The position numbers and the translations under genes were made by a program. A stretch of DNA of 64,000 nucleotides. It comes from Anthoceros angustus (taxonomy: Eukaryota > Plantae > Anthocerotophyta). The DNA lies in NCBI GenBank assembly GCA_010909165.1, contig VJWM01000116.1:1-64000 (forward strand), in the 5' to 3' direction. The notes beneath the pieces were generated by a model that worked only from the letters and a program-made list of their open reading frames with translations, was not told the DNA's origin and did no database searches. Shown one piece after another: positions 46,441 to 55,925 of this stretch; positions within the stretch are counted from its first letter, which is position 1; the number at the start of each line of letters is the position of its first letter.

Positions 46441-47179
46441 GGGTATCTTAGCGTTGCACAATATCCTCTGAGCACGTTTCGAACAAGCTGAAGCGACTAG
46501 AGTTTTTAGCATAGTTGTGACTACTAGGTACATTATTTGAGCACGTCGATGAGGGGTCTAGGCGCCCAAACTCGTGCCCGCTACCCATGCCAAATTCCAT
46601 GTGTGGAAACGCTCCTCATCAAATGTGCTGCAGCAGGAACAGTAAACTCCCAATAATTGACGATACAGATGCGGCAATGCAGTAAATATAGATGGCATAA
46701 GTCCACTTAAAACCGGGCTCCTAGCACGGAATTCTCTCTTCTAGCAGTCACGCTCCCCGAGAAGGAATCCTCATGAAGAACATGCAAAACTGGAAGTCTC
46801 CAGCCTCCTCACGTGCGTGAGAATTCCCTTGAGAGATTCCCTTCGTCAACGAGATGTGTCTGCTAGAAAGGAAAACCTCTACCTCCTGGTAAACAAGGCG
46901 GTAAGTGTGCCATTCAAACGTCTCCTCCTTGCACGGAATGGTCCCTACCAAGAGTTCAAAATCTTCTAGCTATGACGTTCCCCTAGAAAGGAAAGCCTCA
47001 TGAAGGACATGCAGCACTGGAAGTATCTTAACGTCAGACTTTTTCCTTTCTAGACGACAGATCTCGTACACGAAGGGAATTCTCAGAGGTTTGGAGAGAA
47101 GTAGCCACAGCTCCGCTCAAAATTCTAGTAGCTTCAGCTCGCTCGAATGAGCACAGTGGATACTGAAGCTACGATACCC
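46441..47179. repeat. Foldback/MITE-like segment with ~85-bp imperfect inverted arms and internal inverted and direct repeats
   Basis: GGGTATCTTAGC...TGTGACTACT (46441-46525) vs the reverse complement of 47100-47179; inner IR at 46831-46875 / 47041-47084; no TSD seen. Confidence 0.6.
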
Positions 47180-47415
47180 AATTCCAGCATCACCCTACAG
47201 ACACGAAACAAGCTTTTGTCACATAGCCGTAGGTAGGGAGAGCTTGGCCGCTTTCTCCTAGACTACACACAGCCGGAGGGAGTCAGGAAAAACCAACCTG
47301 AATGGTGCACATCTCATCAGTTCAGAGGGTTCGGGCAGCACCTCGATGATCCAGAGCAAGAAGAGCTGACTCTTTCCACCCTTCTTCTAGACCATCAGGT
47401 ACGGTAAGGTACCCT

Positions 47416-49978
47416 TCACCGTATGAATTCGTCCACCATCTCCTGGTACATGCCTGGGAGGAACCGCTTCCCCATATTTCTCACCAGCTCCACCGAGCTC
47501 GGAAACCTGGCTATCATCTTGCCATCTTTAAACACATGCAAGTCCCGAGTATACTGCCCTACGACCTGTCTGGCGCTACTCTTGTGCTTGGTTGCGAGTG
47601 TGAATATTGCTGACCACCTAATCTGGTAGTCAACCAACCTCCTCACATTTGTCAAGTTGTCACAGCAACGATAGTAAGTGAGAAGTGCATAACCCACGGA
47701 TGCGAAGTAGGCTACGATTTCCTCATCTGGAATGTTGGTCTTCGGCCCAAGTGAGTTCGGACGACTCTTCCGAGGAGTGAGTATCCCACGTTTCTTCAAC
47801 TTGTCTGTTATTTCCTCCATCGAGGCCAATACCTGTAGAGGAATAGTATCACGGTACTTGTTTCGCCTTTGAGCTCTCACCTTGTTGCTCACCCTGGGGG
47901 TGACAGCGGCTAATTCAGCTTCAGCCCTATCTTCCTCGTCCAAAAAGTCCTGCATCACCTGCGTCAAATTTTCATGAGCCTCCAATATCTCCTCCGGGAT
48001 TCCAAGCCAGGAAACCTTCATCATGTCCACCTTCTCCTTTTCCAGAAGCTCCAGAACTGTTTGCTTACTTTCACCTGCTTCAAGTTTCTCCAGGGCATAA
48101 TTTGTGACGATCTCCCTTGCTTTCTTGTGCAGGACGTGTTGTGCTTCCATGCTAGAAGCAACAGTTGACCTGACCTTCTTGAAAGCCCTTGCCCAGGCAA
48201 GCAGGATAAGATTCCTCATCTGGATATCCCAGCTCTCTTGTCGCTGCTTTGCAAACTGCTTGAGACGAGCCTTCACGCGCCGACGCTTCTCCATCCCCTT
48301 TGCATACCGTCTCATTCCTTTGGACTCCGGGAGCCCGGCAACTCGCATCCCGAGAAACCTTACGTGCCCACTGGTCACATGCACAAGATGGTCCAACTGG
48401 GCGTCTAGATGGAGATCTCTTTTGACAAAGTCCTGAATCTTGTGCTGGATATCCTTCATTAAAGGTTTTGGCCCAGTGAAACCAACCAGAAACTCGTCAC
48501 CGTAACGAAGGTATCTTATCCTCACTTCTGCATCCCCCTTCCGATAACTATACCCCTCATCTGCCTCTGATTCTGAGTCATCTGAAGCCTCGTCTTCCTG
48601 ATCATGAGTGTCCTCCTGAAAGTCATCCATGTCCCGACTATATTCATACTCTTTTTGCAACTTCAAGACTTCTTGATCGAGCTTGTCCAAATAGACATTG
48701 CAAAGAGCCTTCATAAGTATACTGCCTCTTGGGAATCCGGTCTCAGGTGGGGGATCCTTCAGTTCATGGCAGACACGCGCCTCCATCTGATACAGTCTCA
48801 GCACCAAATCAACAAACCGTTGGTCTTCTATCTGCTCCTCCAGAACACGACGAAGCTGCTGTCGATTCATCTGTTCGTAACACTTCCTGATGTCATATTT
48901 CATGAAGAAATTTATCCCCCTCCACTTCTTCTTCATTTGCAGCATGACAGAGTGGCAACCCTTGGATGGACGAAAGCCATGGGAGTAGTCAGAGAAGTGT
49001 GGCTCGTACACTCTGCTCAAAGCCATACTAGCTGCCTTTGCAAGCAGCTTCTCACTTGGGTCAACTAAAGACCACGATCTGCCCGGAATCCTCACAAACT
49101 CAAATGGTCCCTCTAGCAGAACTCCACCAAGTCCCATCCTGTCTTCTCTTGATTCGGCAGCAACTACCTCCATTTTGCACAGCCTCACTACCTCCATCAG
49201 GTTCTCATATTTGCCACTAGGTCCACGAGGTAACCTTGCCATGCGCACAGCCTCATCATCCATCTGGTCCATCATTTCATCCTGTACAGATACCAAGCCT
49301 CCCGTGCCATCAGCCTCTGCCTTCTCGATCATGTCATCCTGCACATGAATGAAGCCCGACGAGCTATCAGCCTCAGGATGTGACTCCGAAACAAAATCCA
49401 CCTCCTCCTCGGGTTCAGGCAACCAAGCTGACCTCCAAGTCGACCCTGTATCCAAAACACAACACGTGAGAGAGCACCACACAAGGAAGCATCTCCACAA
49501 TTGAATCCCACTGCCAAGAACCCGTTTTCTCCCAACGCAGCATTCAAAACCCACCTGAGCACCACCTCCTCGGCTCAATCATACGCGACACACCCTCGCC
49601 AGGCCTAAATTGCCCGATGCCAACTGGCATTTTCAAAGGCCAGCAGCCATCCGCTGTGAGAGCTGAACGTGACAGCGCGCATTTGAATGCAGCACCTGCT
49701 AATGTGAGCTCACCAGGCTGCCCTGCCCCCATCTGTACGACACAAGAGACACCACCAAAACATGAGACCACCACAATCCCGTGCCGAGAACGTGATCCAG
49801 GCCCTAACAAACGCACCTCCAGAGCAGCGGGCTCACGAGATTCTGCCGATGTCCATCGCAAAGGACGATTGCCGTCCAGCCATGGTAATGCACCAGAAGC
49901 CCGTTTCAGCAGAATGTCCCACGCATTGATCACACCACCCCTCACAGCAACACCCGCTGCAACTGACCTCCTTCCCAT
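47416..49978 (-). CDS. matR: Nuclear-encoded MatR-type group II intron maturase (RT + domain X), predicted 789 aa; exons 49978-49817, 49732-49555, 49445-47416
   Basis: YEPHFSDYSHGFRP..GCHS, DIRKC, NVYLDKLDQE, YLRYGDEFLVG, VRFLG, EKRRRVK and domain X YYRCCDNL..VR..VD.QIRWSAIFTLATKHKSSAR match plant mitochondrial MatR; a GT-AG intron at 49446-49554 joins the upstream ORF in frame; probable 84-bp intron at 49733-49816. Confidence 0.88.
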
Positions 49979-50090
49979 CTCCCCAATGCCCTCTTCCGCA
50001 TGAGCATTACATCACAATACATACATGCCGTAACCCACGCGGAGCAAACAGCAATCAAAGGACTCGATTGTCAGGTTCCACAACGAGGTG

Positions 50091-50105
50091 TTAAACCCTA
50101 AACCC
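50091..50105. promoter_or_regulatory. Telo-box (AAACCCTA) in the shared divergent intergenic region
   Basis: TTAAACCCTAAACCC about 115 bp upstream of the matR-like ATG. Confidence 0.4.
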
Positions 50106-50713
50106 AACCGCCCTCCCGTGAGACCTGTAGAACGAGAAACCTCCCATGATACATCATGGAGTATCATGGGAGGTGTCATGGGCTCCCTGGTATGCAGTAC
50201 ATACATACATACCAGGGTGACTGAAAGTTACTCAACCCCGCTTGTATTGTCCTCCAGTTGAATTCCGTACCGTGGGCGTTAAAAGCTTTATTTAGCAAAC
50301 GTCAGGAACGGCGGAATTATATTTTATATTTTACAAGATGAAATCTAACAATTCTAACCCCGCTTCCTATTCCTTTTTTAGGGGGGAAGGGGTCCGCAAG
50401 CACACGGCTTGTCATCTCGGCATTGGCAGGCGTTTGTAACGTTCCTCCCAGCAATCCACGCGGTTCTGGTGCGGTTCAAACCGAGGCTGTTCTGCAACAG
50501 CTGGCCTGGCCGGAGAGAGCGAGGCGAAGGCGCGACCTGGTTGAAGCTTCCTGGTTGAATGACAGAAGGGGCAAGATTTTTGTGTGTCAGGCACGGTGTG
50601 CGAGTCAGGCTCGGAGCGCGGGACGGGCACAGCCGAGTGCTGAAAGCCGGAATGCCAGATATCATGGTGGTGAATGCAAGGGCGTAGCGCTGAGAGCCTT
50701 CAACTGCGAGGAG

Positions 50714-51973
50714 ATGACGAAGGGAAGCTCCCCGATCCGGGAGTTGAAGGACTTCAAGGACGTCCTGACCGGAGCTTCTCCGGAATACGAGTTGGTGCAT
50801 CCTTCGGGAGGCTGCGGGGAGGCCAGGAAGTACTTCAACTCCAAGGCTGCCGCCGTTCTTCTCGTCATTGCAGTGGTTGTGGTGCTGGCCGTGGTGATAC
50901 CGCTGGCGGTGGTTTTGCCTCGGCGTGGAGGTGGTTCCAGCCTTAGTGTGAACAGCGGGGGCGGCGGGGGTGGCGTTGGCGGTGGCGTTTCTCCCGCTGC
51001 GCAACCGCCTGCGAGCGCTGTGCAGCAGGTGTCGGATCTGATCAAGTTGGCCTGTAATGGCAGTTTGTACCAGGAATCGTGCGTTCAGTCCTTGTCTGCA
51101 TACCCTGGCGGGAATAACGCGACCTTGAGGGATCTGGTGGAGATAGGGCTTTTGATTGCCAAGGCGCAGAGTGAAGCGGGGTGGCAGGCTGCAACCGCTT
51201 TTTTGACTAAGGGTTCTGGTGGTGGAAGTCCGGTGCTCGTTGGTGCGTTGCAAGACTGTGCTCAGCTTATGGAAAGCTCGTTAGGCGGCTTGAATACGTC
51301 GATCGGGATCTACAGCAATTTGAGTACGGTGGCTGCGCTAGCGGTGAATGAGTTAGACGACATGAACCAGCAGCTGAGTGCCAGCGAGACTGACATTGAC
51401 ACATGTTATGAAAGTTTGAAGGAAATGGGGGACTCCCAGATTGGTGATCAATTTCTTCAGCTTTCTGACACTGCGAAACGGATGATCAGTGATGCATTGC
51501 ATCTGACCAACTACTTGAAGGGGACTTTGGACGAACCTGATGATGAATCTGCTGATCCGCCTGTGCCCAACCGACGTCTGCTCTCGATAAGTCCAGGTCT
51601 GAGATCCTGGAGTCTTCGATTTCCCAGCGTTTTGAGATTACCGGCGACCGAGGTTGAGGAGAGGGCTGTTGAGAACGTGTTGGTGTCAGGGAGAGGGGAA
51701 AGGGCAGATTCGGGTCATGCAGACTCTCAGAAGGTGGTGCCTTGCGTCCTGAACTGCTTCAGAGCGGATCCTGTGTGTGGTGAAGACGGAGTGACGTATT
51801 GGTGTGGCGTGGCTGATGCCAAGTGCGCTGGAGTTGAGGTGGCACATTCTGGATTCTGTAATTTCCAAAATGGAGCAGGTGGGAAAGGGTCCATGGCACA
51901 GCAATCTTTGCTTCTAGTACACCTCCTCTGGCTGTTCTTTGCAGGGCTGCTTGTCCTTATTGAACTACCATGA
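50714..51973 (+). CDS. Chimeric membrane protein: N-terminal TM + PMEI/invertase-inhibitor domain + RRLL site + Kazal-type serine protease inhibitor + C-terminal hydrophobic anchor (419 aa, intronless)
   Basis: TM VLLVIAVVVVLAVVIPLAVV; IKLACNGSLYQESC...ALQDCAQL...LSASETDIDTCYESL; RRLL at 51572-51583; CVLNCFRADPVCGEDGVTYWCGVADAKCAGVEVAHSGFC; SLLLVHLLWLFFAGLLVL. Confidence 0.85.
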   Translation: MTKGSSPIRELKDFKDVLTGASPEYELVHPSGGCGEARKYFNSKAAAVLLVIAVVVVLAVVIPLAVVLPRRGGGSSLSVNSGGGGGGVGGGVSPAAQPPASAVQQVSDLIKLACNGSLYQESCVQSLSAYPGGNNATLRDLVEIGLLIAKAQSEAGWQAATAFLTKGSGGGSPVLVGALQDCAQLMESSLGGLNTSIGIYSNLSTVAALAVNELDDMNQQLSASETDIDTCYESLKEMGDSQIGDQFLQLSDTAKRMISDALHLTNYLKGTLDEPDDESADPPVPNRRLLSISPGLRSWSLRFPSVLRLPATEVEERAVENVLVSGRGERADSGHADSQKVVPCVLNCFRADPVCGEDGVTYWCGVADAKCAGVEVAHSGFCNFQNGAGGKGSMAQQSLLLVHLLWLFFAGLLVLIELP

Positions 51974-54490: not shown

Positions 54491-54653
54491 ATATATATAA
54501 GATAAATATGTGAAACATCAAGTATAGAAACCTATTGATATTCTATTTTTCGTTTTCTAGCTATATATAACGATACAACCGCTATAGGTGAGCACATCAA
54601 CTTAAGTGAAGTGTTTGGCCATTGAGGAAACGAAAGTAGTGAGCGTATCAAAA

Positions 54654-55925
54654 ATGGTCGTACAACTTCCAAACCACCTGTGGAAAGAGATTTTATCATG
54701 CTTACCATGCCTCAACTTGGTTCAAGTGAGGTCAGTGTGCAAACAGTGGAACAAGGAAGCTGCGATGTTGCTAGCCAAGCCTAGGCAGCCCTGGTGCCTT
54801 TGCTGCTACTGGAAGCCCTCATTTTTTAATTCCATCCTAATGGCCTTTGACTCCGTCACATTTAAATGGTTTGAGATGTCAATGCCTTTTACGGTAGATC
54901 ACTCATTACGGTGGTTGACTTTGCATCCCAGCAATGGATACTCTGGGTTAGTGCTTTTGACCCGGAGAAATCCACATGAGGAGTTGTGGGTGGGGAATCC
55001 GGTGAAAGGCAAGTGGCGAAAGCTACTAACCAACAACGAGATTGGGATGCAAGAGGCCAGGCTGGCGACGACATTCCACAACTTGATCGTCAACGAGCAA
55101 AGCAAGTCGTATAAGATTGTGAAGTTTAGCATCACGCGAGAGCTAGAGGCACAGTTCCAATTCAAGAGCAATTGGACTACAGAAGTTTATGAGTCTGAGA
55201 CTGGCCGATGGAGACCAGGGGCTTCTTGTATGACCACTGAAGTAATGATAGAAAATTGCTTGGAAAATTACAACAAGTGTGAGTCACATGGCGTCATCTA
55301 CTTCCTCCTGAAGAAAGGACATCGTGATACTTGGCTATTAACTCCTTTTGCACAGCGGGTGAGCATCATGAGCTACAATATAGAGTTGGACAAGTTCAAC
55401 ATCGTCCTGGAGGCAGCTCCATTACAACGCAATTCCTGGATGACCAAGAGCAACCTCTTCTTTTACTCTCTCGAGCCCTTCATCGTCGAAAGTGAACACG
55501 AGGTCACGAGAAGGATTCAAATTGTGGCAAGACTATGGTCCTCTCATCTTTGGAGGCATGAAGCCTCCATATTAGCTTCTAGCAACAACCTGTGCGTGAT
55601 GAGATATGAGCCTCACAAGAATGCTTGGGTCCTAGTTGATGACTCCCAATTCACGATTTCCCCAAGCCTAGATGCCTCCACCTCCACCTGGCCCTCGCAA
55701 TCGGAGAAGCCTCTCTCACATGGTCTTTTCTACACTTCCTTCATGAATTATCAATATTCCCCCTATGGCTATAGCCACACGCATTCTAGTGAGGTTATCA
55801 TGTACGAGCCTCACAACAAGAAATGGACTCAACTGCCTTGTCCAAACAAGGTGCTATACAATATGGAGAAGACCTTGTTCTTTTCCACATATTCCTTCAT
55901 ACCACGCCTAGATGTAGATCCGTAA
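54654..55925 (+). CDS. F-box protein with F-box-associated (kelch/FBA-like) C-terminus, intronless, 423 aa
   Basis: LPNHLWKEILSCLPCLNLVQVRSVCKQW; VGNPVKGKWRKL; TEVYESETGRW; C-terminal FIPRLDVDP. Confidence 0.92.
   Translation: MVVQLPNHLWKEILSCLPCLNLVQVRSVCKQWNKEAAMLLAKPRQPWCLCCYWKPSFFNSILMAFDSVTFKWFEMSMPFTVDHSLRWLTLHPSNGYSGLVLLTRRNPHEELWVGNPVKGKWRKLLTNNEIGMQEARLATTFHNLIVNEQSKSYKIVKFSITRELEAQFQFKSNWTTEVYESETGRWRPGASCMTTEVMIENCLENYNKCESHGVIYFLLKKGHRDTWLLTPFAQRVSIMSYNIELDKFNIVLEAAPLQRNSWMTKSNLFFYSLEPFIVESEHEVTRRIQIVARLWSSHLWRHEASILASSNNLCVMRYEPHKNAWVLVDDSQFTISPSLDASTSTWPSQSEKPLSHGLFYTSFMNYQYSPYGYSHTHSSEVIMYEPHNKKWTQLPCPNKVLYNMEKTLFFSTYSFIPRLDVDP

What the first reader, a model, noticed from the sequence alone, without database searches (positions are those of the whole stretch)
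47416..49978. Nuclear-encoded MatR-type maturase with an acquired, intron-containing N-terminus
Seen: the RT and X domains carry MatR signatures (GCHS, DIRKC, YLxKLDQE, EKRxRVK, YYRCCDNL...QIRWSAIFT...KHKSSAR). The gene sits among nuclear genes, has an N-terminal extension of roughly 170-200 aa with GT-AG introns that restore the frame, and has no group II intron domain V after the stop. Known: matR normally lies inside mitochondrial intron nad1i728, and the usual nuclear maturases nMAT1-4 are separate lineages. Inference: a functional, full-length mitochondrion-to-nucleus transfer of matR or a close relative, now acting in trans and re-imported through a new targeting peptide.
Basis: partly seen in the sequence, partly recalled or inferred. 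Interest (0 to 1): 0.8.

Follow-up and report, generated by a model that had tools for sequence, protein, structure and literature searches.

The report
Nuclear organelle-intron maturase, not matR
A probable hornwort carries an expressed, spliced nuclear gene for a helper protein of organelle group II intron splicing; it resembles the mitochondrial MatR protein but belongs to a separate lineage shared with a clubmoss, so it adds one more case to the known repeated moves of such genes to the nucleus.

Summary
A 789-codon gene lies on the minus strand (ATG 49978, TGA 47416-47418). It has reverse-transcriptase and domain X parts and an N-terminal extension of about 185 residues. Spliced transcript contigs from three related organisms confirm its GT-AG introns: two near the 5' end and a third in the 3' UTR. 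No group II intron RNA lies nearby, and the neighbouring genes are nuclear.

The listed "MatR signatures" are shared by the whole MatR / cox1i44 / nad4i461 maturase superfamily. In a 46-protein maximum-likelihood tree the gene groups with a 68%-identical relative, two nuclear Selaginella proteins and an unnamed family. It falls outside the seed-plant MatR + algal mat-nad4i461 clade. Forcing it together with MatR is rejected (AU p 0.00015). It is also separate from the nMAT3/4-like clade. nMAT1/2 could not be tested.

The RT active site is degenerate (YGDE) and the endonuclease tail is absent. The gene is under purifying selection.

Most likely it is an imported trans-acting splicing factor. 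That makes it a new member of a known kind, since maturase genes have moved to the nucleus repeatedly. The scan noted a second, RT-less nuclear maturase elsewhere in this genome (s1-655568).

The parts
49817..50140 (-). Exon 1: 5' UTR (at least to 50140, where the transcript contig ends) with five upstream ATGs, then the start codon at 49978 and 54 codons of a basic, acid-poor N-terminus
   Evidence: The same MGRR start is found in relative L001.
49733..49816 (-). Spliceosomal intron 1, 84 nt, GTGCGT..ACAG; in frame and without stops
   Evidence: Joint in the X1 contig; sequence.
49555..49732 (-). Exon 2, 178 nt, second part of the N-terminal extension, ending ...RRWCS
   Evidence: L001 has a matching ...KRWCSG end.
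49446..49554 (-). Spliceosomal intron 2, 109 nt, GTGGGT..ACAG; its removal joins the two reading frames
   Evidence: Joint in contigs of X1, X2 and X16, three organisms.
47416..49445 (-). Coding part of exon 3: acidic linker, RT-like domain, domain X, stop TGA at 47416-47418
48343..49071 (-). RT (fingers/palm) domain. The RT1-2 region is shortened, an acidic 42-aa insert lies at 48526-48651, and motif 5 reads YGDE instead of YADD (within RYGDEF, 48490-48507)
   Evidence: Pfam RVT_1 residues 170-412 of the ORF; alignment; low pLDDT in those two stretches.
47554..47832 (-). Domain X (maturase/thumb), the best conserved part (YYRCCDNL, QIRWSAIFT, KHKSSAR)
   Evidence: Pfam Intron_maturas2 residues 583-675; pLDDT 93-98; alignment.
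47195..47297 (-). Intron 3 in the 3' UTR, 103 nt, GTTGGT..TGTAG, starting 118 nt after the stop; both spliced and unspliced contigs exist
46600..47194 (-). Exon 4, 3' UTR (extends at least to 46600, the end of the stretch laid)
   Evidence: X1 contig record 1.

Best explanation
This is a functional nuclear gene for an organelle-targeted group II intron maturase, most likely mitochondrial. It descends from an intron-borne maturase ORF that moved to the nucleus long ago. There it gained a promoter, 5' exons with two spliceosomal introns that encode a presequence-like N-terminus plus an acidic linker, and a 3' UTR intron. It lost the DNA-binding/endonuclease tail and the RT catalytic signature, and kept the RNA-binding scaffold (palm/fingers remnant plus thumb, domain X). 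It would be imported and bind one or several maturase-less organellar group II introns in trans, helping them fold and splice, as nMAT1-4 and MatR do in angiosperms. By descent it belongs to the MatR / cox1i44 / nad4i461 superfamily, but to a separate branch shared with Selaginella nuclear proteins XP_024524942/XP_024518366 and an unnamed family (P0023). It is neither matR nor nMAT3/4. Shown here: gene model, transcription, splicing, domains, selection, tree position. Inferred: import, target introns, splicing activity.
For: Domains: RVT_1 and Intron_maturas2. LtrA is the best solved sequence match at 3e-25. The predicted fold's best PDB match is LtrA in its intron RNP, 8h2h_D, E 5.8e-14. Expression and introns: spliced contigs with zero mismatches, and joints shared by three organisms. 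No differences between RNA and DNA over the 2651-nt contig, so no organelle-type editing. Selection: dN 0.13-0.45 against saturated dS versus the 68%-identical relative; dN/dS is at most 0.26 where it can be computed. Indels in related organisms are 3 and 6 nt inside the CDS but 1-2 nt in the UTR. N-terminus: 3-5 basic and 0 acidic residues in the first 20 aa in this gene, in L001 and in Selaginella. Loss of retroelement functions: YGDE here, YADE in P0001, YLDE in Selaginella, and Asp to Asn in RT3 of the latter two. There is no tail beyond domain X, whereas cox1i44, nad4i461 and nMAT3-like proteins carry 54-122 further residues with HNH motifs. No intron RNA nearby. Tree: clade with P0001 100/100, with Selaginella + P0184 100/99, outside the MatR + nad4i461 + cox1i44 clade 99/99, and apart from the nMAT3-like clade. 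AU tests give p 0.00015 and 0.0006.
Against: Targeting was judged from composition only; no predictor or experiment was available. No mitochondrial MatR from hornworts, lycophytes or ferns, no mat-atp9i95g2 or mat-atp9i87g2, and no Arabidopsis nMAT1-4 could be fetched, so the donor intron is unknown. Exclusion of nMAT1/2 rests on the literature (PMC10012718, PMC3927076). A tree of domain X alone puts the clade next to MatR + nad4i461 (SH-aLRT 89), not outside MatR + cox1i44, so the deeper placement depends on the partition. Five upstream ATGs and a 3' UTR intron 118 nt after the stop suggest low or regulated expression. The run kinds were recorded only as 'RNA?'; that they are RNA is inferred from the spliced contigs.
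Confidence: 0.8

Rival explanations
1. One reading: a mitochondrion-to-nucleus transfer of matR itself (mat-nad1i728g2), as in Pelargonium, replacing a lost or decayed mitochondrial copy.
For: Domain X is 48% identical to Solanum MatR, with near-identical YYRCCDNL / QIRWSAIFT / KHK.SAR blocks. Like MatR it lacks the endonuclease tail and has a degenerate RT. A matR transfer is documented in Pelargonium (PMC5174742). Selaginella, whose nuclear proteins are its sisters, has nad1i728g2 without a maturase ORF (PMC5654404).
Against: MatR pairs with algal mat-nad4i461 (99/95) to the exclusion of this clade, both in the full-length tree and in the X-only tree. The AU test rejects MatR + this clade (dlnL 45.3, p 0.00015). 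Long-branch attraction would favour that union, not oppose it. Identity to nad4i461 (46%), cox1i44 (45%) and P0184 (47%) is about the same. Megaceros nad1i728g2 is listed with an intron-borne ORF.
Confidence: 0.05
2. It derives from another member of intron family F17, the land-plant mat-nad4i461g2, or is the sister lineage of F17 rather than standing outside F17 + cox1i44.
For: The best non-hornwort phmmer hit is Coleochaete mat-nad4i461 at 346 bits. Its host was identified from the nad4 N-terminus of cluster mate P0167. The X-only tree groups the clade with F17 and the algal cox1 ORF (SH-aLRT 89). Land-plant nad4i461g2 keeps only traces of a maturase (PMC10012718).
Against: In the full-length tree, 99/99 support excludes it from the clade holding F17. 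The AU test rejects the union with MatR + nad4i461 (p 0.0006), although that group was named only after the tree had been seen.
Confidence: 0.12
3. The protein is imported into plastids, alone or dually, and helps splice plastid group II introns. It would compensate for plastid matK, which is a pseudogene in Anthoceros and Nothoceros.
For: matK is marked as a pseudogene in the A. angustus and N. aenigmaticus plastomes (PMC6082510). The N-terminus is Ser/Ala/Gly-rich and long (113 aa before the acidic linker), which does not distinguish plastid from mitochondrial transit peptides.
Against: All its relatives are mitochondrial intron ORFs or their nuclear derivatives. Sister genes exist in Selaginella. 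No evidence here bears on the compartment.
Confidence: 0.08
4. It is not a working gene: a mitochondrial DNA insert (NUMT), an assembly contaminant, or a decaying or still-mobile retroelement.
For: RT-type ORFs are often such things, and the RT motifs are degenerate.
Against: There are three spliceosomal introns and spliced transcripts in three organisms, and an intact 789-codon frame. Purifying selection holds over a divergence at which synonymous sites are saturated. The 5' exon is conserved in a distant relative. The flanks are nuclear genes and there is no intron RNA.
Confidence: 0.01

Closest known systems
Selaginella moellendorffii nuclear proteins XP_024524942.1 / XP_024518366.1 (uncharacterized; among the nuclear maturase loci of Guo and Mower 2013 as summarised in PMC3927076)
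   Same: They are in the same clade (100/99). They are nuclear genes with their own small introns, have a basic N-terminus followed by an acidic stretch, share the RGP(S/N)G(K/R)YENL start of the core, carry Y-x-D-E in place of YADD, and lack the endonuclease tail.
   Different: Identity is only about 31%. Intron positions are not shared. Whether they stem from one transfer event or two is open.
MatR (mat-nad1i728g2), the maturase in mitochondrial nad1 intron 4 of vascular plants
   Same: It is in the same superfamily. Domain X is 46-48% identical, the RT is degenerate and there is no endonuclease domain. The presumed role is a promiscuous splicing cofactor.
   Different: This gene is nuclear, has spliceosomal introns and a presequence-like extension, and is not embedded in an intron. 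Phylogenetically it lies outside MatR + mat-nad4i461.
Angiosperm nMAT1-4 (nuclear-encoded mitochondrial maturases)
   Same: It is the same kind of thing: a maturase ORF moved to the nucleus, fitted with a targeting sequence, presumed to act in trans on organellar introns.
   Different: It comes from a different transfer lineage. nMAT3/4-like proteins (Selaginella P0046, Cinchona P0327) sit with Coleochaete P0202 in another clade and keep a degenerate endonuclease tail. nMAT1/2 are assigned to yet another superfamily in PMC10012718; this was not tested here.
Pelargonium nuclear matR (Grewe et al. 2016, PMC5174742)
   Same: It is a precedent for a MatR-superfamily maturase working from the nucleus.
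   Different: That case is a recent transfer of true matR inside one angiosperm genus. This one is an old, separate lineage.
Intron-borne mat-cox1i44g2 and algal mat-nad4i461g2 / cox1 intron ORFs (P0002-5, P0018, P0329)
   Same: They are the nearest organellar relatives (29-38% identity), with the same RT and X architecture.
   Different: Those are fused to the upstream exon, sit in group II introns, and keep YADD. The cox1i44-type (P0002) and Coleochaete nad4i461 (P0018) ORFs also keep an HNH tail; the algal cox1 ORF P0329 has only 13 residues beyond the query's end.

Membership tests
Group II intron RT/maturase proteins | RT (fingers/palm) domain | tested here: met
   Pfam RVT_1 48 bits against a cut-off of 29.6. 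Best fold matches are LtrA and the RT domains of group II intron maturases.
Group II intron RT/maturase proteins | Domain X / maturase (thumb) | tested here: met
   Pfam Intron_maturas2 47.6 bits against a cut-off of 20.8; pLDDT 93-98.
Group II intron RT/maturase proteins | Catalytic YADD and aspartates (active reverse transcriptase) | tested here: not met
   YGDE here, YADE and YLDE in clade mates; the RT3 Asp is Asn in P0001 and Selaginella. NCBIfam TIGR04416 scores 105.8 bits against a cut-off of 300.
Group II intron RT/maturase proteins | DNA-binding/endonuclease (HNH) tail and location inside a group II intron | tested here: not met
   The protein ends about 45 aa after the core of domain X. 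No Rfam group II intron hit.
MatR (mat-nad1i728g2) | Groups with MatR in a maturase phylogeny | tested here: not met
   It lies outside MatR + nad4i461 (99/95). AU p 0.00015 for a union with MatR. The X-only tree also keeps it outside (95*). Only seed-plant MatR was available.
MatR (mat-nad1i728g2) | Encoded in domain IV of mitochondrial nad1 intron 4 | tested here: not met
   Nuclear context, spliceosomal introns, no intron RNA.
Nuclear-encoded organellar maturases (nMAT class) | Nuclear, transcribed gene encoding RT-like + X domains | tested here: met
Nuclear-encoded organellar maturases (nMAT class) | N-terminal organellar targeting peptide and import | tested here: inconclusive
   The first 20 aa are basic and free of acidic residues in three orthologues or paralogues. 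No predictor or import assay was available.
Nuclear-encoded organellar maturases (nMAT class) | Orthology to type II nMAT3/nMAT4 | tested here: not met
   The nMAT3-like Selaginella + Cinchona clade (100/100) is separate and sits with Coleochaete P0202.
Nuclear-encoded organellar maturases (nMAT class) | Orthology to type I nMAT1/nMAT2 | not tested
   No named nMAT1/2 sequence could be fetched. PMC10012718 and PMC3927076 place them in a different superfamily from MatR/cox1i44.
Nuclear-encoded organellar maturases (nMAT class) | Promotes splicing of organellar group II introns | not testable with these tools
   Needs a knockout, RIP or a splicing assay.

The most novel reading that the evidence does not exclude
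The hornwort gene, the Selaginella genes and the P0023 family are one ancient fifth nuclear maturase lineage. It would date from before hornworts and vascular plants split, with its mitochondrial parent extinct in land plants and the gene lost in seed plants. In hornworts it may serve intron families that keep no maturase of their own, such as F11 (atp6i80, atp9i95, cox1i653). In the most novel version it stands in for the pseudogenised plastid matK of Anthoceros.
Probability: 0.07. Interest if true: 0.7.

Novelty: new member of a known kind. Interest (0 to 1): 0.35.

Why it matters
Plant organelles depend on imported splicing helpers. How each intron family came to rely on which helper is an open question (PMC10012718, PMC7049729). 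Hornwort mitochondria hold many introns without a maturase, and I found no paper on hornwort nuclear maturases in the library searched. This gene is a concrete, expressed candidate that can be tested in transformable Anthoceros. Together with its Selaginella sisters it points to a nuclear maturase lineage beyond nMAT1-4. The general phenomenon, recurrent transfer of maturases to the nucleus, has been known since 2003-2013.

Tried and rejected
1. I searched for named angiosperm nMAT3/4 with the Selaginella nMAT3-like protein. Only two hits came back, one a fused Cinchona gene model. No nMAT1/2 sequence was reachable.
2. The MatR word search returned angiosperm sequences only among the 120 listed. 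Gymnosperm MatR came from the representative search. No fern, lycophyte or hornwort MatR was found.
3. I looked for atp9-exon-fused ORFs (mat-atp9i87/95) among all fetched proteins. None was found.
4. I tried to name the host intron of the nearest algal relative, P0329. It lies in a cox1 gene just upstream of the DPAGGGDP exon, but I could not match it to a named streptophyte intron.
5. Context of the P0023/P0184 family: all contigs end about 600 nt upstream, so its 5' part and its organism remain unknown.
6. The supplements of PMC10012718 hold nothing on the Selaginella accessions. Gerke et al. 2020 is not held.
8. NUMT, contaminant and active retroelement were each considered and rejected (see rivals).
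9. No database search was made with the joined (spliced) protein. Searches used the exon-3 frame and the exon 1-2 frame by reference. The joined model was built only inside scripts from window.fa, to find the frame and to serve as one tree row.
Full report
WHAT IS THERE

On the minus strand, an open frame of 720 codons runs from 49578 to the TGA at 47416-47418. A second frame with an ATG at 49978 overlaps its upstream end. Pfam finds RVT_1 (residues 170-412 of the frame, 48 bits) and Intron_maturas2, the domain X of group II intron maturases (583-675, 47.6 bits). Both are above the curated cut-offs. NCBIfam's group II intron RT/maturase model matches at 105.8 bits, far below its equivalog cut-off of 300. 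The best solved relative by sequence is LtrA of the Lactococcus Ll.LtrB intron (3e-25).

GENE MODEL AND EXPRESSION

I laid contigs of four public runs on 46600-50600.
- Run X1 is identical to the window. One 2651-nt contig with zero mismatches covers 47297-50140 and skips 49446-49554 (109 nt) and 49733-49816 (84 nt).
- A separate 57-nt X1 contig skips 47195-47297 (103 nt).
- All three skipped pieces begin GT and end AG on the minus strand.
- The 109-nt and 103-nt joints recur in contigs of two other organisms that are about 95% identical to the window (X2, X16). For the 103-nt intron, X1 holds both a spliced and an unspliced contig.
- The runs are recorded only as "RNA?". Spliced contigs in transcriptome-sized assemblies from three organisms are what make them RNA.

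Joining the exons inside a script gives a single 789-codon frame from ATG 49978. The 84-nt intron is in frame and free of stops. Only the 109-nt intron has to be removed to join the frames. Five short upstream ATGs precede the start.

No database search was made with the joined protein. Searches used the exon frames by reference. The joined model served only for frame finding and as one row in the trees.

The conserved maturase core begins near residue 185 (RGPSGKYENL). It is preceded by 113 residues from exons 1-2 and by an acidic stretch. The first 20 residues carry 3 basic and no acidic residues. The same holds for the relative L001 and for Selaginella XP_024518366. L001 comes from another organism and is 68% identical in protein. 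It has a matching upstream exon that starts MGRR and ends KRWCSG, followed by a gap and then the GSNWRAAW start of the main exon. The 5' architecture is therefore conserved although its sequence is not, as expected of a presequence.

IS IT A WORKING NUCLEAR GENE?

- Neighbouring ORFs are ordinary plant nuclear genes.
- Rfam finds no group II intron RNA in the whole window at gathering scores, nor at E<=5 around the gene.
- Against L001, dN is 0.13-0.45 while dS is saturated. dN/dS is 0.04-0.26 in the segments where it can be computed.
- In the 95%-identical organisms, the indels inside the CDS are 3 and 6 nt, whereas those in the 3' UTR are 1-2 nt.
- The transcript contig shows no base differences from the DNA, so there is no organelle-type editing.

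STATE OF THE PROTEIN

- In an alignment with relatives, the RT1-2 finger region is shortened. A 42-residue acidic insert sits before motif 5.
- Motif 5 reads YGDE here, YADE in P0001 and YLDE in Selaginella, against YADD in the intron-borne relatives. The RT3 aspartate is Asn in P0001 and Selaginella.
- The protein ends about 45 residues after the core of domain X. The cox1i44-type, nad4i461 and nMAT3-like proteins continue for 54-122 residues with HNH-type motifs.
- An AlphaFold model built on a 31-row alignment (mean pLDDT 74) is confident for the palm and for the thumb/X domain (pLDDT 90-98). It is disordered in the N-terminal linker, the shortened fingers and the acidic insert.
- Its best PDB match is LtrA bound to its intron (8h2h_D, E 5.8e-14), followed by RT domains of bacterial group II maturases.
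- This is the profile of a maturase kept for RNA binding, not for reverse transcription or DNA cleavage.

WHICH MATURASE?

The exhaustive HMMER search gave 5349 relatives. After the 65%-identical P0001, the best hits were:
- two Coleochaete scutata mitochondrial ORFs (346 and 320 bits);
- unnamed metagenomic ORFs;
- Selaginella nuclear XP_024524942 (297 bits);
- angiosperm MatR only at 200 bits.

The top Coleochaete ORF is mat-nad4i461g2: a cluster mate carries the nad4 N-terminus in frame. P0002-5, P0020 and Pellia P0041 start with the cox1 exon-1 peptide (FSTNHK), so they are cox1i44-type. Gymnosperm MatR sequences were identified by name.

I built a careful IQ-TREE analysis (46 rows, 677 columns, LG+C20+F+G4 PMSF). 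It gives:
- this gene + P0001, 100/100;
- plus (Selaginella nuclear + P0184 family), 100/99;
- plus an algal cox1-intron ORF, 98/94;
- this group is sister (92/90) to a 25-row clade (99/99). In that clade, seed-plant MatR pairs with Coleochaete/Zygnema mat-nad4i461 (99/95), alongside the cox1i44 type;
- the nMAT3-like pair (Selaginella P0046, Cinchona P0327) lies elsewhere, with Coleochaete P0202.

The MatR + nad4i461 pairing and the separate nMAT3/4 position agree with the intron families F17 and F10 of Zumkeller and Knoop 2023 (PMC10012718). That agreement lends credit to the tree.

Two AU tests were run. Holding the four-row nuclear clade together with MatR lowers lnL by 45.3 (p-AU 0.00015). 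Holding it together with MatR + nad4i461 lowers lnL by 37.1 (p 0.0006), but that second group was named only after the tree had been seen. Both MatR and the nuclear clade have long stems, so long-branch attraction would push them together, not apart.

A quick tree of domain X alone (149 columns) still keeps the clade outside MatR + nad4i461 (95*). However, it places the clade beside them (SH-aLRT 89) rather than outside MatR + cox1i44. The deeper position is therefore not settled.

Domain X identity is 48% to Solanum MatR, 47% to P0184, 46% to nad4i461 and to Gnetum MatR, and 45% to cox1i44.

LITERATURE

- Nuclear maturases arose by several transfers. Selaginella has eight maturase loci and Physcomitrella twelve (Guo and Mower 2013, as summarised in PMC3927076).
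- In Hecht et al. 2011, Table 1, nad1i728g2 and nad4i461g2 of the hornwort Megaceros are marked as carrying intron-borne ORFs, and Selaginella nad1i728g2 as having none (PMC5654404). I could not check whether the hornwort ORF is intact.
- I found no paper on hornwort nuclear maturases in the library.
- That the genome is a hornwort's rests on other agents' notes and on its GC content and short introns. I did not verify it.

MECHANISM (INFERRED)

The protein is made in the cytosol and imported through its N-terminal presequence, most likely into mitochondria. There it binds domain IV/I surfaces of one or more maturase-less group II introns with its thumb/X and palm scaffold, and stabilises the catalytic fold. 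This is how MatR and nMAT1-4 are thought to work.

A plastid role cannot be excluded. It is worth a test because plastid matK is a pseudogene in Anthoceros angustus and Nothoceros (PMC6082510).

VERDICT

It is a new member of a known kind. The scan also noted a second, RT-less nuclear maturase on another piece of this genome (s1-655568), which I did not examine.

Noticed in passing
window 50001-50026 (-): Five upstream ATGs with ORFs of 1-26 codons lie in the 5' UTR, ahead of the main start at 49978. This may damp translation.
   Followed up: partly
window 47195-47297 (-): The 3' UTR intron starts 118 nt after the stop codon. X1 holds both spliced and unspliced contigs. An exon junction that far downstream of a stop is the classic trigger of nonsense-mediated decay, so the message may be kept at a low level.
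   Followed up: no
L002:568-2067 (P0023/P0184 family; also L003, L004): A family of about 20 metagenomic ORFs (437-500 aa) is the sister of the Selaginella nuclear proteins. It keeps RT motifs 5-7 and domain X but has no RT1-4 in the ORF, and motif 5 reads HGRE. All contigs end about 600 nt upstream. The organism is unknown. It may correspond to the RT-less nuclear maturase noted elsewhere in this genome (s1-655568).
   Followed up: partly
window 50140-50714: The maturase gene and the PME-pro-region/Kazal gene (50714-51973, +) are divergently transcribed. Transcript contigs start at about 50140 and about 50373, leaving a very short shared promoter region.
   Followed up: no
L006:1-15076: A metagenomic mitochondrial cox1 gene is packed with introns: at least two group II maturase ORFs and three LAGLIDADG ORFs. 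The exon holding DPAGGGDPILFQHLF is only about 15 codons long. It hosts the closest organellar relative of the nuclear clade.
   Followed up: partly
L007:3001-5469: The Selaginella sister gene has a tiny first exon (about 15 codons) and a short intron, and probably a second small intron near the 3' end. These positions are not shared with the hornwort gene.
   Followed up: partly
window 54606-55925 (+): An intact 439-codon single-exon ORF has an F-box-like N-terminus (LWKEILSCLP). It was not examined.
   Followed up: no
L001:3381-3884 (-): In the 68%-identical relative, the upstream neighbour of the maturase gene is an mTERF-domain gene, another class of organellar RNA factor. This neighbourhood is not shared with the window.
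   Followed up: no
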